From the NCBI RefSeq assembly GCF_006345805.1, contig NC_043012.1, positions 42,718,001-42,782,000 on the forward strand: DNA of 64,000 nt, written 5' to 3'. This document shows positions 1,205 through 48,312 of the stretch, in pieces; the first letter of the stretch is position 1, and each line of letters starts with the position of its first letter. The notes beneath the pieces are model-generated. The model searched no databases. It was not told where the DNA came from and saw nothing but the letters and a program-made list of their open reading frames with translations. The DNA comes from Octopus sinensis (lineage: Eukaryota). Both the position numbers and the translations under genes were made by a program.

Positions 1205-1209
1205 TATAT

Positions 1210-5734: not shown

Positions 5735-5756
5735 TCTATATTTATATATATATAAT

Positions 5757-7847: not shown

Positions 7848-7849
<2 letters not shown>
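5757..7849 (+). mobile_element. RTE-clade LINE, 5'-truncated degenerate copy
   Basis: RT motifs in ORF 5682-6377 (NYRGIKLL, LYADD), in-frame stops after 6375, C-terminal pieces 6659-7281, 3' UTR and GAT tail. Confidence 0.93.
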
Positions 7850-7880
<31 letters not shown>

Positions 7881-7929
7881 TATACGTATCTACACATATA
7901 TACATATATATATATATACATATCTAAAC

Positions 7930-7964
<35 letters not shown>

Positions 7965-14699: not shown

Positions 14700-15050
14700 A
14701 TTAGACTCGGAAAGTTCGTGAGGAACCCATTGACCCAATTTGCTGACTTTTCCGATAGCACACAGGTCTCAATGAATGGTTGAATGACCAAATCCAAGCT
14801 TCTCTGCTAGTTCCTCAACAGTTACGATGAGATTTTGTTCCACCAGGGTTTTCAGGATGTCCTTGTCGAGTTCTACAGATCTTTCAGGATGAGGCTCGTC
14901 TTCTAGGCTGTAGTTTATGGCTCGGGATTTCTGGAACCACCATTGACACTGCCTTACGCTTATTGTCCAATCCCCATATACTGCATTAATATTTCTTGTA
15001 CTTTGCACACATTTATATTCTGTTATTCTTTTATATGTTTCAGCCTTGAG
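14700..15050 (-). pseudogene. Mariner transposase N-terminal HTH remnant
   Basis: INAVYGD.TISVRQCQWWFQK...SLEDEP...LKTLVEQNLIVTVEELAEKLG in ORF 14769-15191. Confidence 0.75.
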
Positions 15051-15194
15051 GTTGTGGCCATGCTGGATCATGTGTGTGTGTGTGTGTGTGTGTCTATCTG
15101 TCTGTCTGTCTGTATGTATATATGTATATGTATGTGTGTGAACAATAATATTTTCAACAGATGTGTTGCAAATGTATCTGATTGTTCTCAAGCT

Positions 15195-15313
15195 TCAATA
15201 CTGTGTGTGTGTGTATGTGTGTGTATGTATGTATGTATATGTATGTATGTATGTATATGTATGTATGTGTGTATGTATGTATGTGTGTGTGTATGTATGT
15301 GTGTGTGTGTATG

Positions 15314-15352
<39 letters not shown>

Positions 15353-15420
15353 ATGTATGTATGTATGTATGTATGTATGTATGTATGTATGTATGTATGT
15401 ATGTATGTATGAGTGTATGT
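15195..15420. repeat. Compound (TG)n/(TATG)n microsatellite
   Basis: Directly visible; source of spurious CVCMY ORFs. Confidence 0.95.
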
Positions 15421-15622
15421 TTACTTTATTACTAACACAAGCCACTACGGTTATTTAATGTAAAGTCTTCCTCAAATCACTCTCTCTCTCGCTATTTACT
15501 CTCTTCCAAGAACATTTTCACTCACTCTTAGCTCTTAGCTTCCCATACATTTTACTCATGTATCTATCAGCGTCATAGACAGAATACTTTCAGTTTAGTC
15601 TTCCTCAAATCACTCTGTCGCT

Positions 15623-17473: not shown

Positions 17474-20400
17474 GGTCTGGCTGAAAGGTAGGTCTGGCTG
17501 AAAGGTAGGTCTGGTGAGATAGTCGAGATGCTTGAACGGAGATGTGTGGATATATGTTGCATGCAAGAAATAAGGTGGAGAGGAGGATCAGCTAGGTTCC
17601 TCACAGGCAAGGAACGCAGGTACAAGATTTTCTGGGCAGGGAACACTGACGGGGTTGGTGGCGTGGGTATACTTATCGCTGAGAAATGGGTAGATAAAGT
17701 AATTGAGGTAATCAGAGTAAGTGACAGAATACTTAAGATTAGATTAGTGCTTCATCATAGTTTAGCAACCATTATATCAGCCTATGCTCCTCAGTCGGGG
17801 CTACCCGATGGACAGAAAGACCGATTCTATGACACTCTACTGCAGACTACCTCATTGACGAACGACAGAGACCTTATCTTTGTGGCTGGTGACTTCAATG
17901 GTCACGTTGGACGACATGCTGGGGGCTTCCATGGCGTACATGGAGGCTATGGCTATGGCTCCCGCAACGAGGAGGGAACCAGGCTGCTGGAGTTCTGCGA
18001 TGCAAATAATCTTATGATTTGCAACACTAACTTCAGGAAACCTACCAGCCACCTAGTCACTTACCAATCGGGCCAACATACCAGCCAAATTGACTACATC
18101 CTTACAAGGCAAAGGGAGAGATGGCTGCTTATAAATGCCAAAACCTTCCCAGGTGAAGAATGTACCCCACAACATAGACTGGTAGTTAGTGACTTTAGGA
18201 TCAGGACTAGGAGGACAACCAGAAGACGACAAATATGGAGAAGAAGGATCTGGAAGCTTAAAGATCCTGCAAATGGACAGAGATTTAGGGACATATTACT
18301 TGAAGCCTCTGACGAAGTAGAAGGGGATAGAGCATCACAGGGGGTAGAAGACAGCTGGACGTTTCTAAGGGACAACCTGCTGAGAGCCACTGACCAGATC
18401 TGTGGCTGGTGCAAAGTCCCCTCTCGACCTAGAATAACGTGGTGGTGGAACAATATTGTAGACAGGGCTATTAGAGAAAAGAGACAGGCTTGGAAGGTCT
18501 GGAAAAATGGGGGTAGCAGGGAATTGTATCAGACTGCCAAAAGAGAAGCTAGGAGACAGGTTTATTTAGCCAGAGGGGAAGCAGATAAGAAAAAATTTGC
18601 CAATGTTCTGCGCCGTGAGGACCAAAGACTGGAGGTGTTTCGTGTTGCAAGACAGTGTTTGAGAGAGAATCGTGATGTGGTAGGAGAGAAGTGTGTTCGC
18701 ATGGAAGATGGTTCACTTGCGCTAAATGAGGATGCGAAGAGAGAGGTTTGGAGATGCCACTATGAAAGGTTGCTGAATGAAGAAAATGAATGGGATAAAG
18801 AGAGTCTGCCGAATGTTGACCCAACAGAGGGACCAGCTATCCGAGTTGATAGTTCTGTGGTAGCTAAGGCAATTAGAAGCATGAAGACAGGGAAAGCCCC
18901 AGGCCCATCAGGAATCACTGCAGAGATGCTCAAAATGTCTGGTAGTGTCGGCTATAGCCTAGTCACCCATATAGTTAATCAGGTGATACACAAAGGGGTC
19001 ATACCCAATGACTGGTGTAGCAGTATAATAGTCAACTGCTACAAAGGTAAAGGTGATGCCCTAGATACAAATAACTACAGAGGTATCAAGCTGTTGGACC
19101 AGGTGATGAAGGTTACGGAGAGGGTCATAGCCCAACTAATTAGAGAGAGAGTTAGTTTAGATGAGATGCAGTTTGGGTTTGTGCCAGGGAAAAGTACTAC
19201 TGATGCTATATTCCTGGTAAGGCAGCTGCAGGAGAAATACCTAGCCAAAGATAAGCCCCTGTACCTGGCTTTTGTTGACATGGAGAAAGCCTTCGACAGG
19301 GTCCCCCGATCCCTTATCTGGTGGGCAATGAGAAAACTAGGGATAGATGAATGGTTAGTGAGAGCTGTGCGGGCCATGTATAGGGACGCCGCTAGTAGGG
19401 TGAGGGTTGGAAATGAGTACAGTGAAGAATTCCGGGTAGAGGTAGGGGTCCACCAAGGCTCAGTCCTCAGCCCCCTCCTATTTATCATAGTCCTCCAGGC
19501 AATAACGGAGGAATTCAAGACAGGATGCCCTTGGGAGCTCCTCTATGCTGATGACCTTGCTCTAATTGCTGAGTCGCTATCAGAACTGGAGGAGAAGTTT
19601 CAGGTGTGGAAACAAGGATTAGAATCGAAGGGCCTCAGAGTCAATCTAGCTAAAACCAAAGTCGTAATCAGTAGGAAGGTAGACAAATCACAAACACCTT
19701 CAGGTAGATGGCCCTGCTCGATCTGTAGAAAAGGTGTAGGTAGAAACTCTATAAGATGCACCAAGTGTAAGCTATGGACACATAAGAGATGCAGCAATGT
19801 CAAAGGAAGGCTAACTAGGAAGATGGTTTTTGTATGTGGCAGATGCTCAGGAACAATAAACACTGAAAATGCTCTGAGACCAACTTCCGTCACTTTCCAG
19901 GGAGAAAAACTAGAAATAGTTGATAGTTTCCGTTACCTAGGTGACCAAGTCAGCAGCGGGGGTGGGTGTGCTGAAAGTGTAACTGCTAGAGTAAGAATAG
20001 CTTGGGCAAAGTTCAGAGAGCTCTTACCTCTGCTAGTGACAAAAGGCCTCTCGCACAGAGTGAAAGGCAGACTGTATGATGCGTGTGTACGAACAGCCAT
20101 GCTACATGGCAGTGAAACATGGGCCGTGACTGCTGAGGATATGCGTAAGCTCGCTAGAAATGAAGCCAGTATGCTCCGATGGATGTGTAATGCCGGTACT
20201 CACACTCGGCAGAGTGTAAGTACCTTGAGAGAAAAGCTGGACCTAAGAAGCATCAGTTGTGGTGTGCAAGAGAGACGTTTGCGCTGGTATGGTCATGTGG
20301 CGAGAATGGATGAAGATAGTTGTGTGAAAAAGTGCCACACCCTAGCGGTTGAGGGAACCCGTGGAAGAGGCAGACCCAGGAAAACCTGGGACGAGGTGGT

Positions 20401-21097
20401 GAAGCACAACCTTCGAACTTTAGGTCTCACTGAGGAAATGACTAGAGACCGAGACCTCTGGAAGTGTGCTGTGCGCGAGAAGACCCGGCAGGACAAGTGA
20501 GTCCACAACCCGTGGCCTTCTACATGGGATGGAGCCAGCCTACGTATGCATACCTTCCCTTCTTGGGACACAAAACTCTACTTGTGAAGACGTGTTGAGG
20601 CAAGTGAGGATCAGAATCGAAATCGATCAATGGAAATTGCGGATGTGCTACCAGTGCCGGTGGCATGTCGAAACTCTGCTTGTGAAGACCCATTGAGGCA
20701 AGTGAGGATCAGAATCGAAATCGATCAATGGAAATTGCAGATGTGTTACCAGTGCCGGTGGCATGTAAGAGAACTTCCGTTTCGCGACCGTTGCCAGCAC
20801 CGCCCCGTTTCGTGTCCGTTGCCAGCCTCGCCTGGCCCTCGTGCCAGTGGCACATAAAAAGCACCATCCGTTCGTGGCCGTTTGCCAGCTCTGTCTGGCA
20901 CCAGTGCGGGTGGCACGTAAAAAGCACCCACTACACTCACGGAGTGGTTGGCGTTAGGAAGGGCATCCAGCCGTAGAAACACTGCCAGATTTGACTGGGC
21001 CTGATGAAGCCTTCTGGCTTCACAGACCCCAGTAGAACCGTCCAACCCATGCTAGCATGGAAAACGGACGCTAAATGATGATGATGATGATGATGAT
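17474..21097 (+). mobile_element. Near-full-length RTE-clade LINE
   Basis: Single long ORF plus modular 3' UTR and (GAT)n tail; 5' end truncated within the first APE strand, with a 17-bp tandem duplication (17474-17490, 17491-17507); no TSD recognised. Confidence 0.97.
17528..20500 (+). CDS. RTE ORF: APE endonuclease + reverse transcriptase with inserted PHD finger (990 aa; frame open a few codons upstream)
   Basis: APE motifs DICCMQE, SAYAP, AGDFNGH, SQIDYIL, PQHRLVV; RT motifs NYRGIKLL, QFGF, FVDMEKAFD, GVHQGSVLSP, LYADD, FRYLG; C4HC3 finger at 19715-19846. Confidence 0.95.
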   Translation: MLERRCVDICCMQEIRWRGGSARFLTGKERRYKIFWAGNTDGVGGVGILIAEKWVDKVIEVIRVSDRILKIRLVLHHSLATIISAYAPQSGLPDGQKDRFYDTLLQTTSLTNDRDLIFVAGDFNGHVGRHAGGFHGVHGGYGYGSRNEEGTRLLEFCDANNLMICNTNFRKPTSHLVTYQSGQHTSQIDYILTRQRERWLLINAKTFPGEECTPQHRLVVSDFRIRTRRTTRRRQIWRRRIWKLKDPANGQRFRDILLEASDEVEGDRASQGVEDSWTFLRDNLLRATDQICGWCKVPSRPRITWWWNNIVDRAIREKRQAWKVWKNGGSRELYQTAKREARRQVYLARGEADKKKFANVLRREDQRLEVFRVARQCLRENRDVVGEKCVRMEDGSLALNEDAKREVWRCHYERLLNEENEWDKESLPNVDPTEGPAIRVDSSVVAKAIRSMKTGKAPGPSGITAEMLKMSGSVGYSLVTHIVNQVIHKGVIPNDWCSSIIVNCYKGKGDALDTNNYRGIKLLDQVMKVTERVIAQLIRERVSLDEMQFGFVPGKSTTDAIFLVRQLQEKYLAKDKPLYLAFVDMEKAFDRVPRSLIWWAMRKLGIDEWLVRAVRAMYRDAASRVRVGNEYSEEFRVEVGVHQGSVLSPLLFIIVLQAITEEFKTGCPWELLYADDLALIAESLSELEEKFQVWKQGLESKGLRVNLAKTKVVISRKVDKSQTPSGRWPCSICRKGVGRNSIRCTKCKLWTHKRCSNVKGRLTRKMVFVCGRCSGTINTENALRPTSVTFQGEKLEIVDSFRYLGDQVSSGGGCAESVTARVRIAWAKFRELLPLLVTKGLSHRVKGRLYDACVRTAMLHGSETWAVTAEDMRKLARNEASMLRWMCNAGTHTRQSVSTLREKLDLRSISCGVQERRLRWYGHVARMDEDSCVKKCHTLAVEGTRGRGRPRKTWDEVVKHNLRTLGLTEEMTRDRDLWKCAVREKTRQDK

Positions 21098-26523: not shown

Positions 26524-27617
26524 GCAGGGGACATACCTCTCAATGGTTGACTGCGGACTGGGGCGGTTGGCCATATGGAGGGAGATGAAGACGGGGACCG
26601 CAGAGGAAATTGTGAAAGTATTGAATGAGATATTCCTGGAACGAGGCCCCGTAGATGAACTGATTCTGGATAATGGCACTGCATTTCGCTCGGAGGTGCT
26701 GAAAGAAATGCTTGATGGGTGGAAGGCCAACCGCTTCTTCAGGGTGGCATACCAGCCAAGTGAAAATGGGGTGGTGGAAAGGCATCATCGTACCATCAAG
26801 ACCATGGCAGAGAGGGGCCACATTTCACCAATCGAGGCTGTATTTTGGTACAGGTCGCCCAGATCAGGACAGGCTGAGGAGTCGGTGCCACACAGGGCAA
26901 TATTCAGGTACGAGTGGAGGCATCCGTGTACTGCATCAATGCGACCTGGGGCAGAGGAAGAGCAAGCCTTCGTAAAAACCCCAAACACATGGTGTACATC
27001 ACGATGGGGAAAGGGAACAATAACCTCTATAAATTCGAAGAACAACATTTCTGTCGATGGTATGCCATGCCACATTTTGGATATATGGAAGATTGTCCAT
27101 ACCTCAGAGGATGGAACCAGCAGCAGTGGGCAAGAAGATGAAGACAACATCAGTAGACAAGATGATGAAGCCAGCAGCAACATGCCAGGAACCAAGGCCA
27201 GTCCTAGGGTCGCACTGCGACCACAGAGGGAACGGCACCTTCCTCCCTGGTTGGTTGATTATGAAACCAGTTAAGGTGTGAGTTCAGGAGCGAGGAGTGA
27301 GTAGGAAAGCCAGTTGAGTGATCTGTAGATCGGGGGGGGGGCGTGTGGTGTTGGCGGTTGGTGTTATGGGACGTGATGAGCTACGTGGTGTTGGTGGACA
27401 GGATGACTGAGGGGTGCATGCGTGGGAGGAAGTGGATGTGGTCAAGGACAACACACGTGTGGTCAGCGAGGAAGCGCGGCAGTTCCAGCATAGACGGCAA
27501 AGCGACAGGACGTGTCGAATTCGTGAGAGACCGCTGATTTCGCCAAGGTAAGGCCTTTTGTATTTCTTTCTCCCATTGCTTCTTTTTGCTGTTGTCCTCT
27601 TCATCCATCACACTACA
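26524..27617 (+). mobile_element. 5'-truncated LTR retrotransposon: integrase C-terminal part + 3' LTR (27344-27617)
   Basis: ORF 26543-27274 closely similar to the integrase at 30900-31686 (LILDNGTAF, NGVVERHHRTIK); G-rich PPT 27332-27341; LTR TGTGGTG...CTACA. Confidence 0.9.
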
Positions 27618-28035
27618 TTGCTTATAGAATTAATAGCCATCTTTAGGCAGCGAGCTGGCAGAATCATTAGCATGCAGGGCGAAATGCTTAGCAATATTTC
27701 GTCTACCATTACATTCTGAGTTCAAATTTTGCCAAGGTCAACTTTACTTTTCATCCTTTTAGGATCTGTGGTGTGGTGATGAGGGAGTGTGACAGAGAGG
27801 GAGGGAGCGGAAGTGGGTCTTGCAGGTCTCGCAGGGCGCATGCGCCGGCGGAAGCAGAAGTGAGAGACAGAACGCACGTGCGGCATCGACCAGGGCAGTC
27901 AGACTCGAGAACGACGCCAAGACGCTAGCAAGTTGGCTCGAGGCGAATCCGGCTTCATCTCTACAGGTAAGACCGAATTACACTTCTAATTCTTTTCCTT
28001 GTTCTGTTACGCTCCTCTTCACCACACTTATCACA

Positions 28036-28047
28036 AGCTATTTCGGC
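28036..28047 (+). promoter_or_regulatory. Primer-binding-site position: AGCTATTTCGGC, complementary to nt 1-12 of tRNA-Phe(GAA)
   Basis: Abuts the 5' LTR CA; identical 12-mer abuts the 5' LTR of the second element (45635-45646); metazoan tRNA-Phe begins GCCGAAATAGCT (from memory of human and Drosophila sequences). Confidence 0.75.
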
Positions 28048-28088
28048 AAAATAATCAATCGGTTTCGTGAAAATAAAAAATAAAAATT

Positions 28089-28844
28089 ATGCAGACTGCT
28101 ATGATTTCACGCGACCCTATAACACCGTTTTGCGGCGACACCGACGTGGTCGCTTGGTTGAGGAGGGTGAAGTTGGTGGCGAAGCTACACGGCATAGCTG
28201 ACCTGGCTAGTTTTATGCCGTTGTATTTGGATGGCCCGGCGTTGGCGTTATATCTGGAGATGGAGGAAGCAGACCAACGCAGCGCGGACAAGGTGGAGAT
28301 CCGACTTATGGAGGCCTTCGCGGAAGGAATGTTTGAAGCGTACACTCGACTGGGTAGGATGAGGTGGACAGGACAGCAGGTGGACGTGTTCACTGGCGAG
28401 CTTAGAAGGTTGGCAAAACTTGCGGGATATGAGGGAGAGTCGCTAGAACGCACGGTCAGGTTAGCGTTCGTGACCGGCTTTCCCGACATCATGTCGGTCG
28501 AGCTACAGAAGCTCCCGAACGTGCGTTCGATGCCGATGGCCGAGATTATATCGCGGGCACGTGTACTGGTGTCGTGCAGCAGGTCGACGTCGGTAGCAGC
28601 GACTGCAACGTCGAAAAGTGGCCCAGCTAGGAGCAACGGAGAGGGGCTGGGGAAAGAACGCGTGCGGTCGTTTAAGGGACAGTGTTTCCGGTGCCAGGGC
28701 CCACACATGGTCCGTGACTGCGCGTCGCCCAAGCCCGAGGTGATTTGCTACCGGTGCCGAGAGCCGGGGCATGTGGCCAGCGAGTGTCTGCGGGGAAACG
28801 GACCGCGGGAGACTACTGCGCCGGTAGTTGTCCCTTTGGATTAG
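28089..28844 (+). CDS. gag: Gag (251 aa) with two zinc knuckles
   Basis: CFRCQGPHMVRDC and CYRCREPGHVASEC knuckles; starts 53 nt after the 5' LTR. Confidence 0.9.
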   Translation: MQTAMISRDPITPFCGDTDVVAWLRRVKLVAKLHGIADLASFMPLYLDGPALALYLEMEEADQRSADKVEIRLMEAFAEGMFEAYTRLGRMRWTGQQVDVFTGELRRLAKLAGYEGESLERTVRLAFVTGFPDIMSVELQKLPNVRSMPMAEIISRARVLVSCSRSTSVAATATSKSGPARSNGEGLGKERVRSFKGQCFRCQGPHMVRDCASPKPEVICYRCREPGHVASECLRGNGPRETTAPVVVPLD

Positions 28845-28853
28845 TAGCGGCGC
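28793..28853 (+). promoter_or_regulatory. -1 ribosomal frameshift signal: G_GGA_AAC heptamer + H-type pseudoknot
   Basis: Heptamer 28793-28799 is phased in the gag frame, and -1 enters the pol frame; 7-nt spacer; stem 1 28807-28816/28824-28834; stem 2 GCGCCG 28818-28823/CGGCGC 28848-28853. Confidence 0.85.
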
Positions 28854-31686
28854 GTTTCTCATCGTTACCTGTGGTCGACATTCTGGTGAAGGGGAAGATG
28901 TCGCGAGCCCTGGTGGACACGGGCTGTACGACGACCCTGATGACCACAGAAGTGGCAGAGACGTGGAGTGGAGGAAGCAGTGTCAGGGCAGTCGACGGAA
29001 GAGAAGTGCACTGCGAAGGGGTTACGGATGCGCAGATTGTGGTGCAGGGACTGCAGCTGACGTTGCGAGCGATTGTGGTCGGTCACTTGGTGGACGAGAT
29101 CGACGTGGTGATGGGGATGGATGCGATCACCCGTCTGGGAGGTGTTACCGTCAACGAGGCTGGCGTAACGTTTGGGCTAGCAGGGAAGCCGTGTAGGGCG
29201 ACACCACGCACCGACGACAACCGTGAGGAAATGGATGCGGCGCACACCATTGAAGACCAGGATTTTCGGGCTGTCTTTGATGGCGAGAGGTGGACAGTGG
29301 AGTGGCACTGGAAGGGAGAGCCCCCGATGTTAAAGAACAAAGTGGGCTGCTATCAGCATACTCTAAAAGGAGATGCCAGAAGTGAGTTCGAGGGGGAGGT
29401 GGAGCGGTGGATTAAGGAGGGCATACTGATCCCCTGAGAAAAAGAAGAGAGCGGAGTCCTGCCACTGATGGCGGTGATACAGCCCACAAAGCGTAAGGTC
29501 AGGCCAGTGCTCGACTTCCGAGAGCTGAATGACCACGTGTCGTGTCATACAGGCGGCGAGGCCACGGATGTCTGCGGAGACACCTTGCGAGAGTGGAGGC
29601 AGACGGCGGGGGCCTCCACGATTGTCGATTTGAAGTCGGCATACCTTCAGGTTCATGTGGCTGAGAAACTATGGAGGTACCAGCTCGTCAGGTATAGGGG
29701 CCGGACGTACTGTCTGACCAGGTTGGGATTCGGGCTGAATTCAGCTCCGAAGATTATGGCAACAATTCTCAAGGCCGTCCTGGGGAAGGTGGACAGAGTA
29801 AAAAGGGCCACCAATTCATACATCGACGACATTCTCGTGGATGAAACCGTGATACCAGCAACGGAGGTCATAGGCCACCTGAAGAGTTTTGGACTGATCG
29901 CCAAGCCGCCAGAGGCTATGGAGGGAGGTGCTGCACTGGGCCTCCCGGCGCCTTGGTGTTCCGGCGAGGGAATGAGATCCCTGAACTGGGCGCCAGCATG
30001 AGTAGACGGGAGCTGTTCTCTGTGTGTGGGAAGCTGGTGGGACACTACCCGATTGCAGGCTGGCTCCGGACAGCATGCAGCTTCATCAAGAGACGAGCCG
30101 AAGGAGTGAAGTGGAATGATAAAGTGGGGGAGAGGACGATCGACATGATGCAGGAAGTCCTGGTCAGAGTAAGAGCAGAGGACCCGGTGAGGGGCAGCTG
30201 GTACGTTCCCAAATCAAAGAGCGGGATCGTATGGTGTGACGCCAGTAGCATCGCAATAGGGATTGTCTTGGAAGTGGGAGGTGTCACGGTGGAAGATGCA
30301 GCCTGGCTCAGGAAGATGGATGACTGCAGTCACATCAACGTGGCGAAGTTGGAAGCCGTGCTGAAGGGGGTGAACCTAGCCTTGAAGTGGGGGTTGCACA
30401 CCATAGAAATCAGGACTGATTCAGCCACTGTACTTGGTTGGGCGACGGCAGTCATCACCGATGAGCGGAGGGTGCGGACCAAAGGGGCTGCAGAGATGCT
30501 GGTAAAGCGTCGATTGGGGATACTGCGTGAACTGACCACTGAGTTCAATCTGAAGCTGAGCGTGATCTTTGTGCCTTCCGAGAAGAACAGGGCAGACGTC
30601 CTGACCAGGGTTAAGCGAGCCTGGTTGCAAGTGCCAGAGGACGCGAAGCAGGATGTAGCTGCAGTATGCCATCTGAGCGACTCGGAGTTGCGGAGACTGC
30701 ACACCATGCATCACATGGGTGTGGACAGGACGTTGTTCCTGGCCAGAAAAGTTGACTCCGACGTAACAAGACAGAGCGTGCGGAGAGTGGTTAGCAGTTG
30801 TGACAGGTGCCAGTCCATCGACCCTGCTCCGGTCGTGCATGAAGCGGGAAGTATTCCAGTGGACCAGGACTGGAGACGACTGGCGGTGGACATAACACAC
30901 TACCGGCAGGGGACATACCTCTCAATGGTTGACTGCAGACCGGGGCGGTTTGCCATATGGAGGGAGATGAGGTCAGGAACCGCAGAAGAAATTGCGAAAG
31001 TGCTGAACGAGATATTCCTGGAACGAGGCCCCGTGGATGAACTGCTTCTGGACAACGGCACTGCATTTCGCTCGGAGGCGCTGAGAGAAATGCTTGATGA
31101 GTGGAAGGTCAACCGCTTCTTCAGGGCGGCATACCGGCCAAGTGGAAACGGGGTGGTGGAAAGGCATCATCGTACCATCAAGGCCATGGCTGAGAGGGGT
31201 CACATTTCACCAGTCGAGGCCGTATTTTGGTACAACATGTCGCCCAGATCAGGACAGGCCGAGGAGTCGGTGCCACACAGGGCAATATTCAGGTACGAGT
31301 GGAGGCATCCGTGTACTACATCAATGCGACCCGGGGCAGAGGAAGAGCACGCCTTCGTGCAGGTCGGGGAGGAAGTCTGGGTGAAACCCCCGAACGCACG
31401 GTGTACATCGCAATGGGGAAAGGGGACAATAACCTCCGTAAATTCAAAGAATAACATCTCGGTAGATGGTATGCCACGCCACGTTTTGGACATACGGAGG
31501 ATTGTCCATGCCCCGGAGGATGGGACAAGCAACAGTGGGCAAGACGATAACAACAGACAGGATGACGAGGTCGGCAGCAACACGCCAGAAACAAGTCCTA
31601 GGGTCGCACTGCGACCACAGAGGGAGCGGCACCCTCCTCCCTGGTTGGCTGACTACGAAACCAGTTTCAGGTGCAGGAGCGAGTGA
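28793..31686 (+). pseudogene. pol: Pol (aspartic protease, RT, RNase H, HHCC-DDE integrase), disrupted
   Basis: ALVDTGC (PR); VLDFRELN, VDLKSAY, FGLNSAP, YIDD (RT); WCDAS, HINVAKLEA, IRTDS (RH; expected E read as K at 30346-30348); HTMHHMG...CDRC, AVDIT, LLDNGTAF, NGVVERHHRTIK (IN). Confidence 0.92.
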
Positions 31687-34622
31687 GGAAGCCGGTTCAG
31701 TGATCTATAGATCAGGGGGGCGTGTGGTGTGGTGATGAGGGAGTGTGACAGAGAGGGAGGGAGCGGAAGTGGGTCTTGTAGGTCTCGCAGGGCGCATGCG
31801 CCGGCGGAAGCGGAAGTGAGAGACAGAACGCACGTGCGGCATCGACCAGGGCAGTCAGACTCGAGAACGACGCCAAGACGCTAGCAAGTTGGCTCAAGGC
31901 GAATCCGGCTTCATCTCTACAGGTAAGACCGAATTACACTTCTAATTCTTTTCCTTGTTCTGTTACGCTCCTCTTCACCACACTTATCACAGGATCGATA
32001 AATTAAGTACCAGTTACACACTGAGGTTGATGTAATCAACTTATCCCCACTCCCAAATTTCAGACCTTGTGCCTATAGTAGAAAGGAGAATTATAGCCAC
32101 CTTAAATGTACCTAGTCACATGCAAACATGAAAAGCATGTACCAATATTCACATATCAATGATATAATTTACAATATACAGTATTCACAATATACAATAT
32201 TCACAGTAATAGTTTGGCACCTCCTACTAATATCTTCATAGATACGTGAGAATATCTATCAATAAGAACATGTTTGGCCATACATTTGCATATTGTCCAC
32301 CTGACTGATGATGTGCCAATAAAGATAGTCTCTACATCAGGTGTGAAGAGCCTTTTTTCTGTACTAGTGATAAATGCAAGTGCATAAGAGTCATTTAGCA
32401 TTCGTTCTGTGTTGAGTTTATAACTGTGCAACTTATATTAAATTATTATTTTGGTATTAAGGTTAAAGTCTTTTTGTTTGTTCATATGGATTGTTTGAAA
32501 CTTTGTCAAGGAGTTGTTTCAAATTTGAAAATGGGTAAAATTTTGCATGCGAACAAAGATACTTTTATTCCTGCTCTACACAGTCATTGGCTTACAAGAA
32601 ATAACATTCAAATCCCTCTGAAAAAATCTTTCAAAAAGGGTGCAGTCACATTAGATAATGTAGTCCTATTCCTATGACAGTATGATCACTGCTGGACTGC
32701 TTTGCCTCATAGGTCTGCTCAAATGCTGACCAACGGCTAAACAACCAACAAAGTTCTCAGAAGGTCCTCTGAAATAACTTTTTCTCTTTCTTTTTTTTTT
32801 TTTTTTTTTTTGTCACTCTCTACACCTACAGAATGCACGTTACCTAATCCTTTATGCTCCCAAAAACACACATCTACAACTTGTTTCTCTCATCCACTGA
32901 CCTTCAACAGTTCAAACTATAACTTCGCCAGCTCGCCTCCACCTCGCTTCTAGGAGAGCCTTTAAAGATTGTAAGTTCTGTCTATATCAGAGCAAATACT
33001 TACGAGTGTACGTAAATCGGCATGTTTAAAGACGAGGTTGTATGTCTAACACTAGATCTCTATATGCCAGCGTATGAGAGATTTCGAACTATTTACGTCA
33101 AGAGGTATGTGGGACATTATCTAATATGACCTTCTCGTCCTTTTTCAAGACTGTAGTTATGCAATTTGAGGAGAATATGGAAGTTATTTCTAGCATGTCA
33201 ATGACAATGTGCAGCAGAATTAAGAGACTTTTTGCTCAAATACAAAATTTAGGCATCACAAAACCAGCGTAAGTGTTTTAAAGACTTTTACTGCAAACTA
33301 TTTCAAACCAGAATGCAGCAGACTAACTCATCGCAACTAGTTATTTTGGTGCACACCCACATACACATTTAACATAAATATAACGTTTCAAATTTAATAA
33401 GAGTGAAGTGGTAAGACACATTTTCCATGAGAGGCAACTTAAGTGAAATACATGTTCATTTACCCATGTGAATGGTTTTGGGAGTTAAAACGAGAGGTGA
33501 TACAGAATATACAATCTACGAAATATAAAATATGGACACAAAAGAAAATACGCAAAAGAATTATTATAGGAGAGTAGGAAGAGATAGAAAGAAAGCAAGG
33601 CGGAGTAAGAGAAACAAACACCTGACCTTCCCTCCTGATGCATGTGTCGGTATTTACCTTAATAGCTTTTGCTATAATAACGAGTTGTTTTGTGTCTATA
33701 TATGTTGAATATCTTGTATTGCAGTGTGTACGTCATTTTCCCTAATACAGGGTCAAGATAGATTAATTATAAAAAGATATTTTTGTTATATACACTTGTT
33801 TGTGTGTCTTGCAACTATTTGCAGAATTCAAGACAAAATTCTTATTTAAAGAATAAGTTGAAAAGAAAGTACTTTATTAGGCGATCTTACGAAAGATCGC
33901 CCTTTATTATGATCTAAGTAATAAAGTCGCTTAAAAATCACACAACATATATTTAATTCGACCATTTGTTGGAGTAGGTGTGAACTGAAGTAGTTTCGGA
34001 AGTATAGTGAGGGAGACAGCAAGATAATATAACTTGTTAGGCTACAGACACAGGTTCAACAACACAAACAAATCGGGACCGAAGTTGATAAGAGAGAAAT
34101 CTTACCTGAATTTCAAAAGCAACAAACCTTGTCAAGATCCCATGTAACTTGTAATATTTATGAGATACTGGAAATCAAAACAGAAACAAAACTGTTGGTG
34201 TCGACTTACATCTCTTCCTGATGTTATTGTTTTGTTCTTTGCATTTATCAGCTTGTAATTGTTGTGGGTGACACTGTTGGCATTTACATACATAAATAAA
34301 GGCTTTGAAACTGTGTGCATGCAATGTATAACCCTCTCCAAGCAGACTGAGATGCAATTGCCGCGTCTTCCTGACTTTCATTTACTTTTTTCCCCTCTGG
34401 TTGTCTTCTCCTTGTTCACTTCAATACACTTCACCGTCTCGCTCTTCTTCCCTTCTTTCCTCTTTCCTTTAGTCACTTCTTTTTCAATTATTTTTACTTT
34501 CATTACCTCTGTATTTATTCCTTCCTTCTCTTTTCTATATTCTGCATTTTCTCTATCAGTGTCTTCATTCCTTCCTACTTCTCATTCTCTTCACACTACA
34601 TCTGCCACCTCCTCCTTCGTGT

Positions 34623-34999: not shown

Positions 35000-35077
35000 T
35001 AAAGAACATCTCTCTTTGAGAGATTTAGAAATAATAATGTTTGTATGTTATAAATAAATAAATATAAATACACATAC

Positions 35078-35134
<57 letters not shown>

Positions 35135-35136
<2 letters not shown>

Positions 35137-35358
35137 GGAGTAAACACATAAATGTGAAACAAGGTGGAAAAAAGAGTACTCAAATACCAGTGGTAGAGTA
35201 ATATGCTTTATTTAAAGCAGCAGAAAATTCAACAAAATCTGTTACTCTGAGTTTCTCGTTGCCGTTCATCAGACAGTTTTTGCAAAAACTGTCTGATGAA
35301 CGGCAACGAGAAACTCAGAGTAACAGATTTTGTTGAATTTTCTGCTGCTTTAAATAAA

Positions 35359-35359
<1 letters not shown>
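35135..35359 (-). mobile_element. Short Penelope-like terminal remnant with inverted duplication, inside (TA)n
   Basis: 154-bp perfect palindrome 35206-35359 containing hammerhead motifs; (TA)n on both flanks; the PLE assignment is inferred from the known association of PLEs with minimal type I hammerheads. Confidence 0.55.
35289..35326 (+). ncRNA. Type I hammerhead ribozyme motif (mirror copy on minus strand, 35239-35276)
   Basis: CTGT-CTGATGA-ACG GCAA CGA-GAAA-CTC A GAG-TA^-ACAG: core, GNRA-capped stem II, stem III, GUA triplet, 4-bp stem I; A.A mismatch at the base of stem II. Confidence 0.75.
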
Positions 35360-35415
<56 letters not shown>

Positions 35416-35649
35416 ACACGGAAAACAAAAAATGTAAGCATCTGTAAATTCTGTGCTGGTGTCATGAGAAATGTTTCTATTTTGTGACACAAAATATAGA
35501 AAGTAATGTAACACCAATGACTATATAATCCAACCAAAATATCTCAGTTACACAAACGTAAACAGAATTAATATTTAACCTTAAAATACATCATACATAT
35601 TCAAAGAACCTCCTTGGTTTTGTGGTAAGGAACGTTTTTTCTGGTATTC

Positions 35650-38035: not shown

Positions 38036-40739
38036 AATGTGCAGAAAATTGTTTGAAAATGTATGGAAAAAGCAAGAAGAGTCCTCCCATGTCATCCTCA
38101 GATTGAGGGCCTTTCACACTACAATGATGTTCCTTGCAATCCTGGGAAAGAGGTTCGGTGATGCAGGACTGTCAGATATGGTCATCAAAGTTAGTATCAT
38201 TGCTTCTGGTTCAATTCTTGCAGTTCTTGAGGGTCAGCAATACAATCACGCCATACGAACATGGAAGCTATGTAGCATCTGAGAATCAAAGCCTTTTATG
38301 AATGGGCACAGAAGAACCATACTCATTTACTCCAACCCACTTGGGCAGCAATGGATAATGTCAGCAGTGAGATCACTTCAGATAATTTCAATAACATGTT
38401 GGCACCAGAGTTCACACGTCTCTTGGAATTATTTGATGAGTTCTGCAAGTTGGACCAAGGTAAACTGGCAGCCTTTTGGGACTCTTACATTGACCTGGTC
38501 TACCTATTGCTTCTATTCACATGTGCTACTAGAGAGGGAAACTGGATTTTGCATCTTGCTTCTGTGCGTGAGATGCTACCTTGGATGTTTGCATACGACA
38601 GAACAAACTATGCCCGTTACCTCTCTGTGTACTGGTGTGAGATGAAGACCCTGCTTCAGACACATCCTGAAAGCAATACTCTTCCCCTGGAAGAGCATTT
38701 TACAGTTCAACGATATTCCAAGAGTGCATTTTGCCAAGTTGCTGTTGACCAGACCATTGAGCAAACTTTGAATCGTGACTCCAAAACGAGTGGTGGTGTA
38801 GTAGGTATCAGCCTCAACCAAGGGGAGGGGCAGCGTTGGGTTCTGATAGCACATGACGGGACAAGAATACTTCAAATCTGCAGGAAGACGGCTGGTATGT
38901 ATGATGCCCAGAACCAACACCACAAAGAAACTAGTTCTCCTCTCCTAAAGAAAGATGAAGGTGATATTAAAAAAGTCATGGACACGATAGAAAGTTGGGT
39001 GAGCCCATTTGAGACAAAGAACACAACTGATTCTCTCATCAACATTGCATCAGGAGTAAAATCCACTGATGATATAACAGAGGATATTTTGTCTGCAGAA
39101 GAGAAGGGAGCTAATGCCTTCTCATCTTTTGTACATGAGAGGCTGTGTAGCAGTCAGACAGACCTTTATTCCTCATTAGCAAAGACTGCACTCAAAACAT
39201 TTAGGAACCCAGTGAAAACAAAGAAAACTAAAGGTACCATCACAGATGTTGTAATCAAGGCTGATAGTGGACTCTTTGCAAAGATGGTGGTCATTGCTCA
39301 ACACAGACAAATGAACATGAAAGAAGTTTTGCAGTATCCACTAGGTCCTCAGTCATGGTCCCTTGCAACTCCTGATGGTGCACCTGCAAAGACTACCAAG
39401 GCATCCCTTTTACATTCATTAGAAGAGCTAGCTAAACCAGCAGAAAACATCCCTACAACAGCAGTATGGATCTTTGATGGAATGGCTTTGCTGCAATCCA
39501 TAAAGACAGTCCCCAAGATATTCAGAGATCTTGCTACTTGTGTTCTTTATGTTCTTGAAGTGCTGAAGTCAACAAGCAATAACCCTGCCAGAATAGACCT
39601 AGTTATGGACCAGTATCCTGAGCTATCTATCAAGAACCCAGAGCAAGCAAAGCATGGAACATCAGGTGTCTTGAAAAGGAAGATCCTTGGCAGGCATCAG
39701 AAGTGCCCGACATAGTGGAAGAAGTTTCTTAGTGATGGTGGGAACAAGACCAAACTTGCAAAGTTTCTGGTGAAAGAGTTACAGCAGCCAGAATATGCTT
39801 CCAGGTTTAAAGGGTTTGGACCACTGTACATCACCCATGGGGATGAGTGCCACATGCTTGTTGAGAATTATGATTGTGTAAAATGCAGTAGATCAACTGT
39901 GCACATCAAAGGAAGAAGCTGACACCTGCATTCTGCTACATGCAGGCCATGCAGCATTAGAGGGGAATGCATGCATCATGATTAAGTCACCTGATACAGA
40001 TGTTGCTGTGTTGACCTGTGCTTATAGCCATCAAATCAATGCAAGACTACTATTCTGCACTGGCCCCACACAGAGACAAAGGTACCTTGATGCCACAGCT
40101 ATTGGCCTGAAACTAAGAAAAGATGTGTGTGAAGCAGTGCCAGGAATGCACGCATTCACAGGATCTGGCAGCACTAGTGGATTTGTTGGTAAGGGAAAGA
40201 GGCAGGCATTCAAAATGGTGGTGTCTGATGTAGAAATGTGCAATGCGATGAGAATGATTGGCTCATCGTTTCATATAGATGATGAAAAGCTGCAAGCAAG
40301 TTTGTTTGTTTGTTCTCTCTCTGAGTACAGTGGCAATGATACCGACCTTGTCCACTACAAACTATTCTGCAACAAGAATGCCGAAATATGTCATCTTCAA
40401 GATGCACTCAAGTACTATGTGAAGCGGGCAAATTACCAAGCATGCATCTGGCGACCAGCACTAGATGCATCTGAAACCACACCAAGTTCAGATGTCCATG
40501 GCTGGGACCTCAAAGATGACACATTGGCTATCCACTGGATGGACAAACCACCAGCACCAAAAGCACTCCTGTTATTGATATCTTGTAAATGCAGTATTAG
40601 CCAGTGTAACGGTAGTCAGTGCTCATGCCTTGTGAATGGTTTGTCGTGCACTGATGCCAGTCAATGCAAGTCATGCACAAATACCACAAATATTGATCAA
40701 ACAGAATCCAGTGATGAGGATGAGGATGAGGATTATTAA
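38036..40739 (+). pseudogene. Academ-like transposase/XPG/Cys8 protein, fragmented
   Basis: LRLRAFHT.MMFL...GL.D (G.FH region); AYDRTNYARYL; VAVDQTIEQTLNRDSKTSGG; EEADT...IKSPDTDV...FVGKGK (XPG-like); CKCSISQCNGSQCSC...CTDASQCKSC; stops at 38280 and 39713, frameshifts. Confidence 0.75.
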
Positions 40740-45100: not shown

Positions 45101-45384
45101 GAGAAAAGGAACTGGAGAGGACACTTACCTTTGGCATTCGAGGAGATCTTGGACAGTGAAGTTCTTAGATTATCTCAAGAGGTCTTCCTACATCAGGAGA
45201 GCCACATCACTGTCATCCTTCTTTTTTCTTTTATTTTTGTATATTATGCGTACTTCTCTTCTTTGTTTTTATTGTATACAGTGTATACTTTCAATTTTTT
45301 TATCATTTCATCCACACATTATGTCTGTCTTTGTATTGCCTTTCTCATCCTTCCCACTGGTGGCAAATAAAAGAAATCATTATT

Positions 45385-48312
45385 TGTGGTGGAAGGGTAA
45401 TTGACCAGGCACAGGAAGACCAGATGGGACAGCACGTCAGGAAGCAACTGGGTAAGTCTGACTCTAATTTTATGCCGTCTGAGAATGAGGCAAGTTGTGC
45501 TGCAAGAAGTAGTGTGAGGGGATCTGAGCTGAAGAGATTGGTTGAGTCAACACATAACAACTGAATGATCTGGCCACAGTACCCGATTGCACTTCGGTAT
45601 AAGAGCGACTCTATTTCCATGCCTTCAAACTACAAGCTATTTCGGCATGTTGTTACCGGCTGTGATGATATGTCTAAGAAGTATATAGAAAGATTTTTTT
45701 TAAATTTTTGTTGCTCTTGTTTTCCCTTTGTTTTTTTTTTTTTGTGATGGCCACAAAAATCAAAATCAGTAGTGATGTGTTGAAACCATTCACTGGGGAA
45801 GGCAATGTGATGTCCTAAATAAAGAAGGTAAGACTTGTGGCAAGGCTGCAGGAAATAGATGTGGCTAGCCTAATGCTGTTGTACTTAGAAGGCAGTGTTC
45901 TGAATCTGTACTTGGAGATGGATGAAGCAAACCAGGAGAAAGCAGGAAAAATTGAAGAGTGGCTGAAGGACATGTACATGGTTTTAAAGCCTACAGCAAG
46001 CTCAGTAGAGTAAGATGGACCGGCAAGCAGATAGACAACTACATGAGTGAGATTAGGAGGTTGGTGGGCCTAGCAGTGTTTACTGGAGCAGTGATGAAGC
46101 TGACTTTTGTGACCGGCTTCCTCAACCATATCTCTCTACATCTGCAGGAGATGCCGGACATTGAAACGATGTCGGTAGGAGAGATGTAGTGACAACAGTG
46201 ACTGCATATACAAACAGGACAAAGAGGTAGACTTGCTTGCTGATGTGACATCATCTAGTCCCTTCTGATCCTCCTGTGCTGTCTCTCCTTCTCCCTTCTG
46301 GTCAATTACTCTGAAGGAGGTACAGTACTGGGGCTCAGGCTCAAAAGAGATAAAGCTCATAGGCTTGTGTTTCACAGGAGAAACAAGATCCTGGACCTAA
46401 ATCAGGATATGAATAGGTGAGGGCTATTCTCAATGTGTAGGAAGCTACTTGGTCACGACCCTGTCACAGGATGGCTCCAAAAATGTAGCTATTTCAAAAG
46501 TGAGCAGAAGGAGTGAACTGGGGTGATAAAGTGGGAGAGAAGACAATGATGATGATGCAAGAGGTCTTGGAGAGAGTGTGAGTGGAAGATCCAGTGAAGG
46601 GCAGCTGGTACATGCCTGATACAAAGAAAGTGACTATGTGGTGCATAGCATTGGGAGTCATGCTGGAAATAGGAGGTGTCAAGATGGAAGACGTGGTGAG
46701 GTTTAGGAAGAAGGGTGACTACAACTACATCAATGTAACTGAACTGGATGCTTTGTTAAAGAGTGTAAACCTAGCCCTGAGATGGGAATTATGAACTGTT
46801 GAGGTCCAGACTGATTCTGCCATAGAATGAGGGTGGGTGGAATCAGCAATCACCAACTGGAATTGGATTCGTACAAAAGGGGCAATGGAAATGATGATTA
46901 AGCATTGCCTGGGAATCCTGAGGGAGCTAACTGCCAAGTTCAACCTGGATTTGCATGTGGTTTCATGCCCTTGGAAAAGAATAAGGCAGACATTCTAACC
47001 AGAGTAAAAAAGCATTGGTTGGAAACAGCAGAGGATGTTCCAAGTGGGGTAGCTGTGGTTTGTCAGCTACAGGGCACAGAACTGAGGAGGATACACAAAA
47101 TGCACTACATGGGGGTCAACAGGAGGTTGTTTTTTGGCTAGGATGGTTGACCCCCAATGTCACCAGGGAGAGTGTTCAGAAGATAGTGGGGAACTGCAAC
47201 AGGTGCCAGTCGATTGATCCAGCCCCAAGTGCACACGAACCAGGAAAGAATCAGATAGAGGAAGACTGGAAGAAGCTAGCCATTGATGTGACACATTATC
47301 AAGGAAAGGTATACCTACCTTTCAAAGGTCAACTGTAGGCCAGGGCACATGGCTATATGGAGAGAAATCATGGTAGAGACTGCTGCCAAAGTTGCAAAAG
47401 TGCTGAAGGCAGCGTTCTTGGAAAGGGGGCTTGTAGTCAACCTATTGATGGACAACAGCACAGTTTTTCATTCAGAGCAGCTGAGAGAGATGCTCAAAAG
47501 GTGGAGCACAAGACACTTCTTCAGAGCTGCACACAGACCAGATGGAAATGGGATAGTGGAATGGCACCATCATATGATTAAAGCCATGACTGAGAAAGAA
47601 CGAATCTCCCCTATGGAGGCAGTCTTCTGGTACAACATGTCACTCAGAGTGGGGCAAGCTGAAGAGTTGTTCTTGCAAAGGGCCATATTCCAGTACAAAT
47701 GGAGACACCCGAGCATAGTGCCACAGCAGCTAAAGGTAGAAGGGGTTACATCTATGCAGGTTGGAGGTGAAGTGTGGGTGAAGCCCCCAAACACTTGGTG
47801 CACAAAGCAATGGGAAAAAGGAAAGGTAATCGTGATCAATACATTGAATAATGTATCAATGGATGGAATGCCGCATCACATCCTGGATATTTGAAGGGTG
47901 ACGAAGGGGAGGGAGAAGCCACCCCCATAACCCTACAGACATCTCAAAGGGAATGTTATACCTCCCACCCACCGAGTGGATGGACAATTATGAAACAAAA
48001 CAAGGGAGCAGTGATCTTTAGATCAGTGGGGCATGTGGTGGAAAGGTAACTGACCAGAAGGGAGAAGGAGACACAACACAGGAAGACTGGAAGGGACCAG
48101 ATGACATCACATCGGTGAGTGACAGGGCAAGTTTGCCTCTTCTTCTATGCTGTCTGCAGACAAGACAAGTTGTGCTGCAAAAAGTAGTGTGAAAGGATCC
48201 AAGCTGAAGAGATCAGTCGAGTCAACACATTATAACAGGTGAATGATCTGGCCACAGTACCTGATCACAACTTGAGGTAAGAGCGGCTCTATTTCCATGC
48301 CTTTAAACTACA
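45385..48312 (+). mobile_element. Older, internally deleted LTR retrotransposon of the same lineage as 27767-31991 (PR-RT missing)
   Basis: LTRs 45385-45634 and 48034-48312 (TGTGGTGG...CTACA); 5-bp TSD TTATT; gag remnant about 45780-46200; RH NVTELDALLK; IN ORF 47349-47894; PBS-position 12-mer 45635-45646. Confidence 0.92.

What the first reader, a model, noticed from the sequence alone, without database searches (positions are those of the whole stretch)
28036..28047. LTR retrotransposon primer site is complementary to the 5' end of tRNA-Phe, not to a tRNA 3' CCA end
Seen: AGCTATTTCGGC(A) starts immediately after the 5' LTR CA. There is no TGG-type PBS. The same 12-mer (again followed by A) sits at the same position in a second, older element (45635-45646) whose LTR and leader are otherwise not alignable by eye. 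Established: metazoan tRNA-Phe(GAA) starts GCCGAAAUAGCU (recalled from human and Drosophila). Canonical LTR elements prime from a tRNA 3' end; copia and Ty5 use tRNA halves; Tf1 self-primes after RNase H cleavage of an 11-nt duplex. Inference: the geometry puts the 3' end of tRNA nt 12 at the LTR boundary. This lineage may prime minus-strand synthesis with a ~12-nt 5' tRNA-Phe fragment, or invade the acceptor stem (the TTTCGGCA part mimics the tRNA's own 3' acceptor strand) and cut the tRNA itself, Tf1-style. I know of no described lineage with this mode, but could not search the literature.
Basis: partly seen in the sequence, partly recalled or inferred. Interest (0 to 1): 0.88.

Follow-up and report, generated by a model that had tools for sequence, protein, structure and literature searches.

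The report
Retrotransposon primer site matching tRNA 5' end
A widespread family of small invertebrate LTR retrotransposons has, exactly where the reverse-transcription primer must bind, a 12-base site complementary to the first 12 bases of a host tRNA (tRNA-Phe here) rather than to a tRNA 3' end, which points to a priming mode I could not find described.

Summary
AGCTATTTCGGC occurs twice in the window, each time as the first 12 bases after the 5' LTR of an LTR retrotransposon with 5-bp target duplications. It is the exact complement of nt 1-12 of metazoan tRNA-Phe, whose 5' end I checked in two papers.

The site is a lineage-wide trait. In 36 junctions from relatives, a 12-nt block follows the LTR's ...ACA. 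Hosts include a cephalopod, a sea hare, a barnacle, a mantis shrimp, a sea spider and a bryozoan, plus many metagenome contigs.
- Conservation stops dead at base 13.
- gag's ATG follows 0-50 nt later, sometimes immediately, so no other primer site fits.
- The positions complementary to tRNA nt 8-12 and 1-4 are near-constant. Only acceptor-stem positions 5-7 vary, among a few recurring versions that do not follow element phylogeny.
- No element carries a self-complement, so Tf1-type self-priming is out.

The most likely mechanism is that the first 12 nt of a host tRNA, cut between nt 12 and 13, prime minus-strand synthesis. This is inferred, not shown. I could not check host tRNAs for the variant sites. 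Ten literature searches found no description of such a site.

The parts
27762..27766 (+). Target-site duplication GGATC, left copy, of element 1
   Evidence: Same 5 bases at 31992-31996 directly after the 3' LTR.
27767..28035 (+). Element 1, 5' LTR (269 nt, TGTGG...ATCACA)
   Evidence: 99% identical to 31723-31991.
27964..27972 (+). 5' splice-donor-like motif CAG|GTAAGA inside the LTR, 72 nt before its end
   Evidence: Similar motifs at the same relative place in element 2, L001, L059, L062 and L052. Absent in most other relatives. Function untested.
28036..28047 (+). Primer-binding site of element 1: AGCTATTTCGGC, complementary to tRNA-Phe nt 1-12
   Evidence: Lineage-wide conservation.
28089..28844 (+). 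gag (251 aa, CCHC zinc knuckle)
   Evidence: ORF. Pfam zf-CCHC.
28745..31686 (+). pol (protease, RT, DUF7047, RNase H, integrase) in the -1 frame relative to gag. Defective: an in-frame stop at 29435-29437 and a frameshift near 29940-29960.
   Evidence: ORF pieces 28745-29437, 29468-30001 and 29953-31686. Pfam hits. 49-68% identity to intact ~950-aa pol proteins.
31714..31722 (+). Polypurine tract AGGGGGG plus a 2-nt spacer CG before the 3' LTR
   Evidence: The same G-run plus 1-2 nt spacer is seen in L001, L002, L037, L056, L058 and L062.
31723..31991 (+). Element 1, 3' LTR
31992..31996 (+). Target-site duplication GGATC, right copy
45385..45634 (+). Element 2 (older, internally deleted), 5' LTR
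   Evidence: 77-84% identical to 48034-48312 over the two repeat blocks found. TSD TTATT at 45380-45384 and 48313-48317.
45635..45646 (+). Primer-binding site of element 2, the same 12-mer
48034..48312 (+). Element 2, 3' LTR
26524..27617 (+). 3' part of a third, related copy: integrase C-terminal ORF 26543-27274, G-run PPT, and LTR 27344-27617. Its 5' end and primer site are not present.
   Evidence: 82-96% identical in blocks to 30906-31666 of element 1. Sequence.

Best explanation
The 12 bases after the 5' LTR are the whole minus-strand primer-binding site of a compact (~4.2-4.8 kb) lineage of invertebrate LTR retrotransposons. The site pairs with nt 1-12 of a host tRNA, that is the 5' acceptor strand, U8, A9 and the first three D-stem bases. 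In this host and most relatives the tRNA is tRNA-Phe.

To give a 3'-OH at the LTR boundary, the tRNA must be cut between nt 12 and 13, so the primer is a 12-nt 5' tRNA piece. I think the cut is most likely made after annealing by the element's own RT/RNase H. That would be the way Tf1 cuts its 11-nt self-primer, but acting on a host RNA.

Later, plus-strand strong-stop DNA copies the primer and runs off its 5' end. This would explain why the site is exactly 12 nt and ends at tRNA nt 1.

Shown: position, length, complementarity, conservation, and the absence of other primer sites. Inferred: primer identity, the cut, and the enzyme. My sub-confidences are about 0.9 that this is the primer site and pairs with a tRNA 5' end, about 0.65 that a 12-nt tRNA piece is the primer, and about 0.35 that the element's RNase H makes the cut.
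For: 1. The site lies exactly at the LTR boundary in two window elements with intact LTR/TSD anatomy.

2. It is the exact complement of tRNA-Phe nt 1-12. No other conserved complementarity to tRNA-Phe exists within 200 nt of the site or near the 3' LTR.

3. In 36 junctions from relatives with 34-68% amino-acid identity, information content is high from -3 (ACA) to +12 and near zero from +13. Named hosts are Argonauta, Aplysia, Amphibalanus, Oratosquilla, Nymphon and Watersipora.

4. The gag ATG follows 0-50 nt after the site, and directly after it in L014, L045 and L027. There is no room for another site.

5. Variation is confined to the bases pairing with acceptor-stem nt 5-7. The complement of U8-A9-G10-C11-U12 and of G1-C2-C3-G4 is kept. 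The same few variants recur in diverged families.

6. Variant type is decoupled from element phylogeny. L016 (AAA type) and L030 (CGA type) share 84% RT-core identity, while the two CGA-type elements L014 and L007 share 57%. This fits adaptation to a host-supplied partner.

7. Young multi-copy families carry variants. Oratosquilla has LTRs 97-99% identical and two copies with the same site. Nymphon has LTRs 99.6-100% identical and two copies with the same site.

8. One relative (L037) has the complement of GCCTCGGTAGCG. From memory, this is one base from the elongator tRNA-Met 5' end. L034 has the complement of GCCCGGATAGCT, the tRNA-Lys3 5' end. Both keep the 12-nt frame.

9. No self-complement exists in any element.

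10. The site is unstructured in a fold of the leader.

11. In L001 the 3' LTR ends ...CA+AG, and AG is the first two bases of the site. This is what copying of the last primer bases onto the U5 end would give.
Against: - There is no direct evidence of a 12-nt tRNA fragment, of a cut at nt 12/13, or of cDNA joined to it.
- Known 5' tRNA fragments are longer (14 nt or more, from memory).
- Host tRNA-Phe sequences for the variant sites (GCCGCGA.., GCCGUGA.., GCCGGGA.., GCCGAGG.., GCCUAGA..) could not be read, so covariation with the host is inferred, not shown.
- The Nymphon site, read in the 12-nt frame, predicts a tRNA starting with C (CUAGUGAUAGCU). That is unusual outside tRNA-Tyr. Read instead as a 14-nt site, it would not fit any tRNA.
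- L056 and L057 raise the same frame question.
- A 12-bp duplex is short, though from memory the Tf1 (11), Ty1 (10) and Ty3 (8) sites are no longer.
Confidence: 0.6

Rival explanations
1. Same primer site and same tRNA partner, but the 12-nt primer is made beforehand by a host nuclease as a very short 5' tRNA fragment and is packaged or annealed ready-made. The element's RNase H plays no part in making it.
For: The sequence data do not distinguish who cuts. Host 5' tRNA fragments exist in animals (general knowledge).
Against: Described 5' fragments end in the D loop or later (14 nt or more, from memory). A fragment with extra 3' bases would be mismatched against the LTR's ...ACA and could not be extended. 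A precise 12/13 cut inside the D stem has no known host enzyme.
Confidence: 0.2
2. The site is a primer site, but its partner is another host RNA that carries the same sequence. Examples are a tRNA-derived SINE transcript or a pre-tRNA, rather than mature tRNA-Phe.
For: tRNA-derived repeats are present next to the elements: a SINE-like fragment at 27640-27760 and tRNA-like hits in L059 and L060.
Against: Complementarity always ends at the base pairing with tRNA nt 1, and base 13 is random. This fits a processed 5' end, not an internal stretch of a longer RNA. The site is the same across phyla whose SINEs differ.
Confidence: 0.07
3. The 12-mer is not a primer site but some other conserved cis element, for example for packaging, translation start or end processing. 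Priming would then happen elsewhere or by another route.
For: No experiment links the site to priming. The invariant AG at its start could also serve integrase end processing.
Against: It occupies the exact place of the primer site in all elements. Nothing else lies between LTR and gag. Its variation pattern copies tRNA architecture, with invariant U8, A9 and G10 complements and a variable acceptor stem. Its type changes independently of the element's proteins.
Confidence: 0.05
4. Tf1-type self-priming: the 5' end of the element's own transcript folds back onto the site.
For: There is no TGG site and the duplex is short, as in Tf1. L001's LTR contains GCCGTGATAGCA, which could pair imperfectly with its site.
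Against: No reverse complement of the site, allowing up to 2 mismatches, occurs in any contig or in the window. The best intramolecular duplexes are weak and differently placed in each element.
Confidence: 0.02

Closest known systems
Tf1/sushi-group self-priming (Tf1 of fission yeast, and relatives)
   Same: No TGG site. A short duplex (11 nt in Tf1, 12 nt here) abuts U5. The primer is the 5'-terminal piece of an RNA and must be released by an internal cut. Plus-strand strong stop would end at the primer's own 5' end. (The Tf1 facts are from memory and from PMC5006619 and PMC6934838.)
   Different: In Tf1 the partner is the element's own transcript 5' end. Here no self-complement exists, and the partner sequence is the 5' end of a host tRNA.
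Half-tRNA priming of copia, 1731, Ty5 and Tca2 (Ty1/copia group)
   Same: A host tRNA is used after an internal cut, so that a 5' fragment, not the CCA end, supplies the 3'-OH (from memory).
   Different: Those sites pair with the anticodon stem-loop region of initiator tRNA-Met (or tRNA-Arg), giving a primer of about 39 nt. Here the site pairs with nt 1-12 of tRNA-Phe-like tRNAs. Gene order here is PR-RT-RH-IN, not the copia order.
Canonical tRNA 3'-end priming (retroviruses, most Ty3/gypsy and BEL/Pao elements)
   Same: A host tRNA is the partner. The site sits directly after U5. The partner tRNA can differ between sublineages.
   Different: The canonical site starts with TGG and pairs with the 3' CCA end. 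This is absent here.
Skipper elements of dictyostelids (non-canonical site of unknown mechanism)
   Same: An LTR retrotransposon lineage that has replaced the TGG site by something else, with no self-complement (PMC5006619).
   Different: Skipper has a degenerate polypyrimidine stretch with no identified partner. Here the partner is identifiable.
Cigr-1 clade of Ty3/gypsy (Ciona; also reported in molluscs, PMC6238403)
   Same: From memory, Cigr-1 is about 4.2 kb with 245-bp LTRs and one long gag-pol frame. That is the same compact build as this lineage.
   Different: Membership was not tested because no reference sequence was at hand. I do not know what primer site was reported for Cigr-1.

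Membership tests
Integrase-bearing LTR retrotransposon | Direct LTRs with TG...CA ends, short target duplication, polypurine tract, gag with zinc knuckle, pol with PR-RT-RH-IN | tested here: met
   A 5-bp TSD is seen in 6 of 6 elements checked: window element 1 and element 2, L001, L002, L058, L062.
Canonical tRNA 3'-end-primed elements | Site starting with TGG within a few bases of the LTR, complementary to a tRNA 3' CCA end | tested here: not met
   No TGG between LTR and gag ATG in the window elements. In several relatives ATG follows the 12-mer directly.
Tf1/sushi-type self-priming | Site complementary to the first ~11 nt of the element's own transcript (within the LTR) | tested here: not met
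   No reverse complement with up to 2 mismatches in any contig. No consistent intramolecular duplex.
Tf1/sushi-type self-priming | RNase H of the element cuts an RNA:RNA duplex to release the primer | not testable with these tools
   Needs enzyme assays.
copia/Ty5 half-tRNA priming | Site complementary to the anticodon stem-loop region of initiator tRNA-Met; integrase upstream of RT | tested here: not met
   Complementarity is to nt 1-12 only. Order is PR-RT-RH-IN.
Troyka | CG...CG termini and 3-bp target duplications (PMC12440569) | tested here: not met
   TG...CA termini and 5-bp TSDs.
BEL/Pao | Pfam Peptidase_A17, DUF1758/1759, DUF5641 signatures | tested here: not met
   None of these was hit. 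The hits were RVT_1, DUF7047, RVT_3/RNase_H, Integrase_H2C2 and rve (and precomputed domains).
Retroviridae / lokiretroviruses / Odin | Tether (degenerate RNase H) plus a second RNase H; env or an extra ORF | tested here: not met
   About 145 residues lie between YIDD and the RNase H DAS motif in P0002. There is no extra ORF in 4.2 kb. Even so, the nearest solved RT and IN sequences and folds are retroviral.
Ty3/gypsy (Metaviridae) in the wide sense | PR-RT-RH-IN order and phylogenetic placement of RT within the group | tested here: inconclusive
   The order is met. The pol profile reaches only 1,266 clusters at E<=1e-30 and 7,378 at E<=1e-10 among 1.84 billion proteins, and the Pfam RVT_1 hits are weak. 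The lineage therefore looks remote. No phylogeny with reference elements was possible.
Cigr-1 clade | RT phylogeny with Cigr-1 of Ciona | not tested
   No reference sequence available. This is a lead from memory only.

The most novel reading that the evidence does not exclude
A deep-branching, DUF7047-bearing lineage of animal LTR retrotransposons primes reverse transcription with the first 12 nt of a host tRNA. The element's own RT/RNase H cuts the tRNA in the RNA:RNA duplex formed with the genome. This would be a trans version of Tf1 self-priming and a possible evolutionary bridge between tRNA priming and self-priming. The tRNA 5' acceptor strand would act as a host-range determinant that the element re-tunes, or switches (Phe, Lys or Met types), when it changes host.
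Probability: 0.4. Interest if true: 0.9.

Novelty: new variant of a known kind. Interest (0 to 1): 0.85.

Why it matters
- All textbook priming modes of LTR elements use a tRNA 3' end, a tRNA half cut in the anticodon arm, or the element's own 5' end. A site matching a tRNA's 5' terminus would add a fourth mode. It raises a concrete biochemical question: who cuts a tRNA at nt 12/13?
- Annotation tools that look for tRNA 3'-end complements (LTRdigest-type searches) will score this whole lineage as having no primer site.
- Host control by 3' tRNA fragments that target canonical sites would miss these elements. 5' tRNA fragments or the tRNA itself could matter instead.
- The recurring site variants give a ready-made natural experiment on how a retroelement tracks a host tRNA.

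Tried and rejected
- Self-priming: I searched each element for the complement of its own site and for the best intramolecular duplex. Nothing consistent was found.
- A bipartite site as in Ty3 or HIV: I looked for further tRNA-Phe complementarity within 200 nt of the site and around the 3' LTR. None is conserved.
- Leader structure: a fold of 27940-28100 is no more stable than shuffles, z = 0.5.
- Host tRNA: no tRNA gene in the window. The fetched loci held only tRNA-Val-like and tRNA-Ser-like hits.
- Literature for the variant 12-mers as tRNA ends: only GCCCGGATAGCT (tRNA-Lys3) was found.
- Literature for a 5'-end primer site: ten searches, nothing. Searches are now exhausted, and subscription journals and Repbase reports are not covered.
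- Viral contig scan: no relatives.
- Structure: the AlphaFold model of pol (pLDDT 61.6; RT-RH part 70-90) matched foamy virus, HIV-1 and CaMV RT. This confirms RT-RH but gives no finer placement.
- Troyka, Odin and lokiretrovirus papers: no primer-site information and different anatomy.
- One look-up (P0022) found no contig.
- Process note: a script copied the fetched loci, plus a 4.35-kb window slice holding the whole defective element 1, into a temporary BLAST database. Nothing was printed and the files were deleted. Later comparisons used protein pieces only.

Full report
**What is in the window**

The 12-mer AGCTATTTCGGC occurs at 28036-28047 and 45635-45646. It occurs nowhere else on either strand, even with one mismatch allowed (expected 0.14). 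Both copies are the first bases after a 5' LTR.

Element 1 has the following parts:
- 269-nt LTRs, 99% identical (27767-28035 and 31723-31991), with TGTGG...ATCACA ends
- a 5-bp duplication, GGATC
- a polypurine tract AGGGGGG plus a CG spacer (31714-31722)
- gag with a zinc knuckle (28089-28844)
- pol in the -1 frame, with protease, RT (YIDD), Pfam DUF7047, RNase H and integrase

Its pol is defective. There is an in-frame stop at 29435-29437 and a frameshift near 29940-29960.

Element 2 (45385-48312, TSD TTATT) is older. Its LTRs are 77-84% identical over the two repeat blocks found, and its interior is deleted.

The 3' part of a third related copy ends at 27617. The whole element 1 is only 4.2 kb.

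**Is it a tRNA 5' end?**

A Drosophila tRNA-Phe 5' probe and a human tRNA-Phe forward primer show that metazoan tRNA-Phe starts GCCGAAATAGCTCAG.... The 12-mer is the exact complement of nt 1-12.

Complementarity does not run into the LTR, except for one extra base in the Argonauta copy. It does not run past nt 1. No other stretch of tRNA-Phe has a conserved complement near the site or near the 3' LTR.

There is no TGG between LTR and gag. The window has no tRNA gene, so the host's own tRNA-Phe is assumed to be the usual metazoan one.

**Relatives**

The pol has 711 homologues at E<=1e-10. Many lie on ~4-kb contigs from metagenome and run assemblies. Others come from Argonauta hians, Aplysia californica, Petrolisthes and Oratosquilla.

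A profile search of 1.84 billion representatives found 1,266 clusters at E<=1e-30 but only 7,378 at E<=1e-10. The lineage is therefore sizeable but remote from mainstream pol families. One cluster is from the nematode Trichuris suis.

I fetched loci from named genomes, from ENA and JGI contigs, and 53 loci from a metagenome scan.

**The junction in relatives**

In 36 junctions a 12-nt block follows the LTR end. Information content is high from -3 (ACA) to +12 and falls to noise at +13.

The gag ATG follows after 0-50 nt. In L014, L045 and L027 it follows immediately. The 12-mer is therefore the only non-coding sequence between LTR and gag.

Many contigs are circularly permuted (pol-PPT-LTR-site-gag). 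This shows whole LTRs of ~160-390 nt.

The site reads AGCTA-NNN-CGGC. Written as the tRNA-sense strand, the variants among the 36 junctions are:

| tRNA-sense 12-mer | Loci |
|---|---|
| GCCGAAATAGCT | 16, including window (two elements), Argonauta, Aplysia, barnacle, bryozoan |
| GCCGCGATAGCT | 6 |
| GCCGTGATAGCT | 5 (6 with L026) |
| GCCGGGATAGCT | 2 (4 with L006 and L012) |
| GCCGAGGTAGCT | 2 |
| GCCGTGTTAGCT | 1 |
| GCCTAGATAGCT | Oratosquilla, two copies of a young family |
| CTAGTGATAGCT | Nymphon, two copies with near-identical LTRs |
| GCCCGGATAGCT | L034; this is the tRNA-Lys3 5' end |
| GCCTCGGTAGCG | L037; from memory, one base from the elongator tRNA-Met 5' end |

The kept bases are the complements of U8, A9, G10, C11, U12 and of G1-C2-C3-G4. 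The variable bases pair with acceptor-stem nt 5-7. This is how tRNAs themselves vary.

Two contigs (L056, L057) and the Nymphon family look like 13-14-nt sites if aligned to the others. Read in the fixed 12-nt frame from the LTR end, they still give seven bases followed by UAGCU. Both readings remain open.

**The site tracks something outside the element**

In a neighbour-joining tree of RT plus RNase H pieces, the site types are interspersed. L016 (AAA type) and L030 (CGA type) share 84% RT-core identity. Two CGA-type elements, L014 and L007, share 57%.

Diverged families from the same sample series share a type: the JAAUYE contigs, the Ga01877xx contigs and the ERZ17400xx contigs.

No element contains the complement of its own site.

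**Mechanism**

A primer must end with a 3'-OH opposite the first base of the site, which means at tRNA nt 12. The tRNA's own CCA end lies at the far end of the duplex and has no complement in U5, so a cut between nt 12 and 13 is required.

From memory, the nearest precedents are Tf1 and copia/Ty5. In Tf1, RNase H frees an 11-nt primer from an RNA:RNA duplex. In copia and Ty5, a tRNA is cut in the anticodon arm.

A 12-nt primer also explains the sharp distal boundary, because plus-strand strong-stop synthesis would run off the primer's 5' end.

In L001 the TSD places the 3' LTR end at ...CA+AG, and AG is the first two bases of the site. This is as if the last primer bases were copied onto the U5 end. 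It is a single case and could be chance.

Which enzyme cuts is not known.

**Classification**

The anatomy excludes copia (gene order), Troyka (CG..CG, 3-bp TSD), BEL/Pao (no signature domains) and retrovirus, Loki or Odin types (no tether, no extra ORF).

The nearest solved sequences and folds are retroviral, foamy-virus and CaMV RT, and MMTV and HTLV integrases.

From memory, the compact build resembles Cigr-1 of Ciona, a clade also reported in molluscs. I could not test this.

**Novelty**

Ten full-text searches found no description of a primer site complementary to a tRNA 5' terminus. Subscription journals and Repbase reports are not covered.

**Limits**

- Host tRNAs for the variant sites were not available.
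- The tree has no support values.
- Metagenome hosts are unknown.
- Some tRNA sequences (Met, Tyr, the full tRNA-Phe) are from memory.
- Process note: a script briefly held a slice with the whole defective element 1 in a temporary file, which was deleted.

Noticed in passing
window 27964-27972 and 45449-45457; L001 (-93), L059 (-23), L062 (-31), L052 (-44) relative to the LTR end: A 5' splice-donor-like motif, (C/G)AG|GTAAG, lies inside the LTR upstream of the primer site in the mollusc/arthropod members. In element 1 a pyrimidine-rich stretch follows it, and the site itself begins with AG. It could be a small intron in U5 or a U1 snRNP binding site. Most metagenome relatives lack it.
   Followed up: partly
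L001 7020-7040 and 2960-2990: The Argonauta copy's 3' LTR ends ...CAAG. The end is fixed by TSD TCAGT. The extra AG equals the first two bases of the primer site.
   Followed up: partly
window 17528-20500, with truncated copies near 1-3400, 5900-7300, 8800-10050 and 54600-55650: A non-LTR retrotransposon with endonuclease and RT domains (990-aa ORF) and several 5'-truncated copies.
   Followed up: partly
window 27640-27760: A SINE-like, tRNA-related fragment lies between the partial upstream copy and element 1. ARAGORN and Rfam do not call it.
   Followed up: no
window 38351-39715 and 39978-40739: Two adjacent ORFs (454 and 253 aa) with no Pfam match. They look like part of another mobile element.
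   Followed up: no
L059 2095-2167 (minus strand); L060 22727-22814: A tRNA-Val(CAC)-like sequence lies about 200 nt upstream of the Oratosquilla element's 5' LTR, and a tRNA-Ser-like sequence lies in the barnacle locus. They may be genes or SINEs.
   Followed up: no
pol proteins P0001-P0210; profile search: The pol profile reaches few proteins outside its own lineage: 7,378 clusters at E<=1e-10 among 1.84 billion. Nearly all listed members carry Pfam DUF7047 between the RT palm and RNase H. The lineage may deserve its own name.
   Followed up: partly
window 1200-1320, 4080-4180, 5680-5760, 7830-8000, 15050-15450, 35040-35430: Many (TA)n and (TG/TA)n microsatellites. The Argonauta and Aplysia loci have the same kind.
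   Followed up: no
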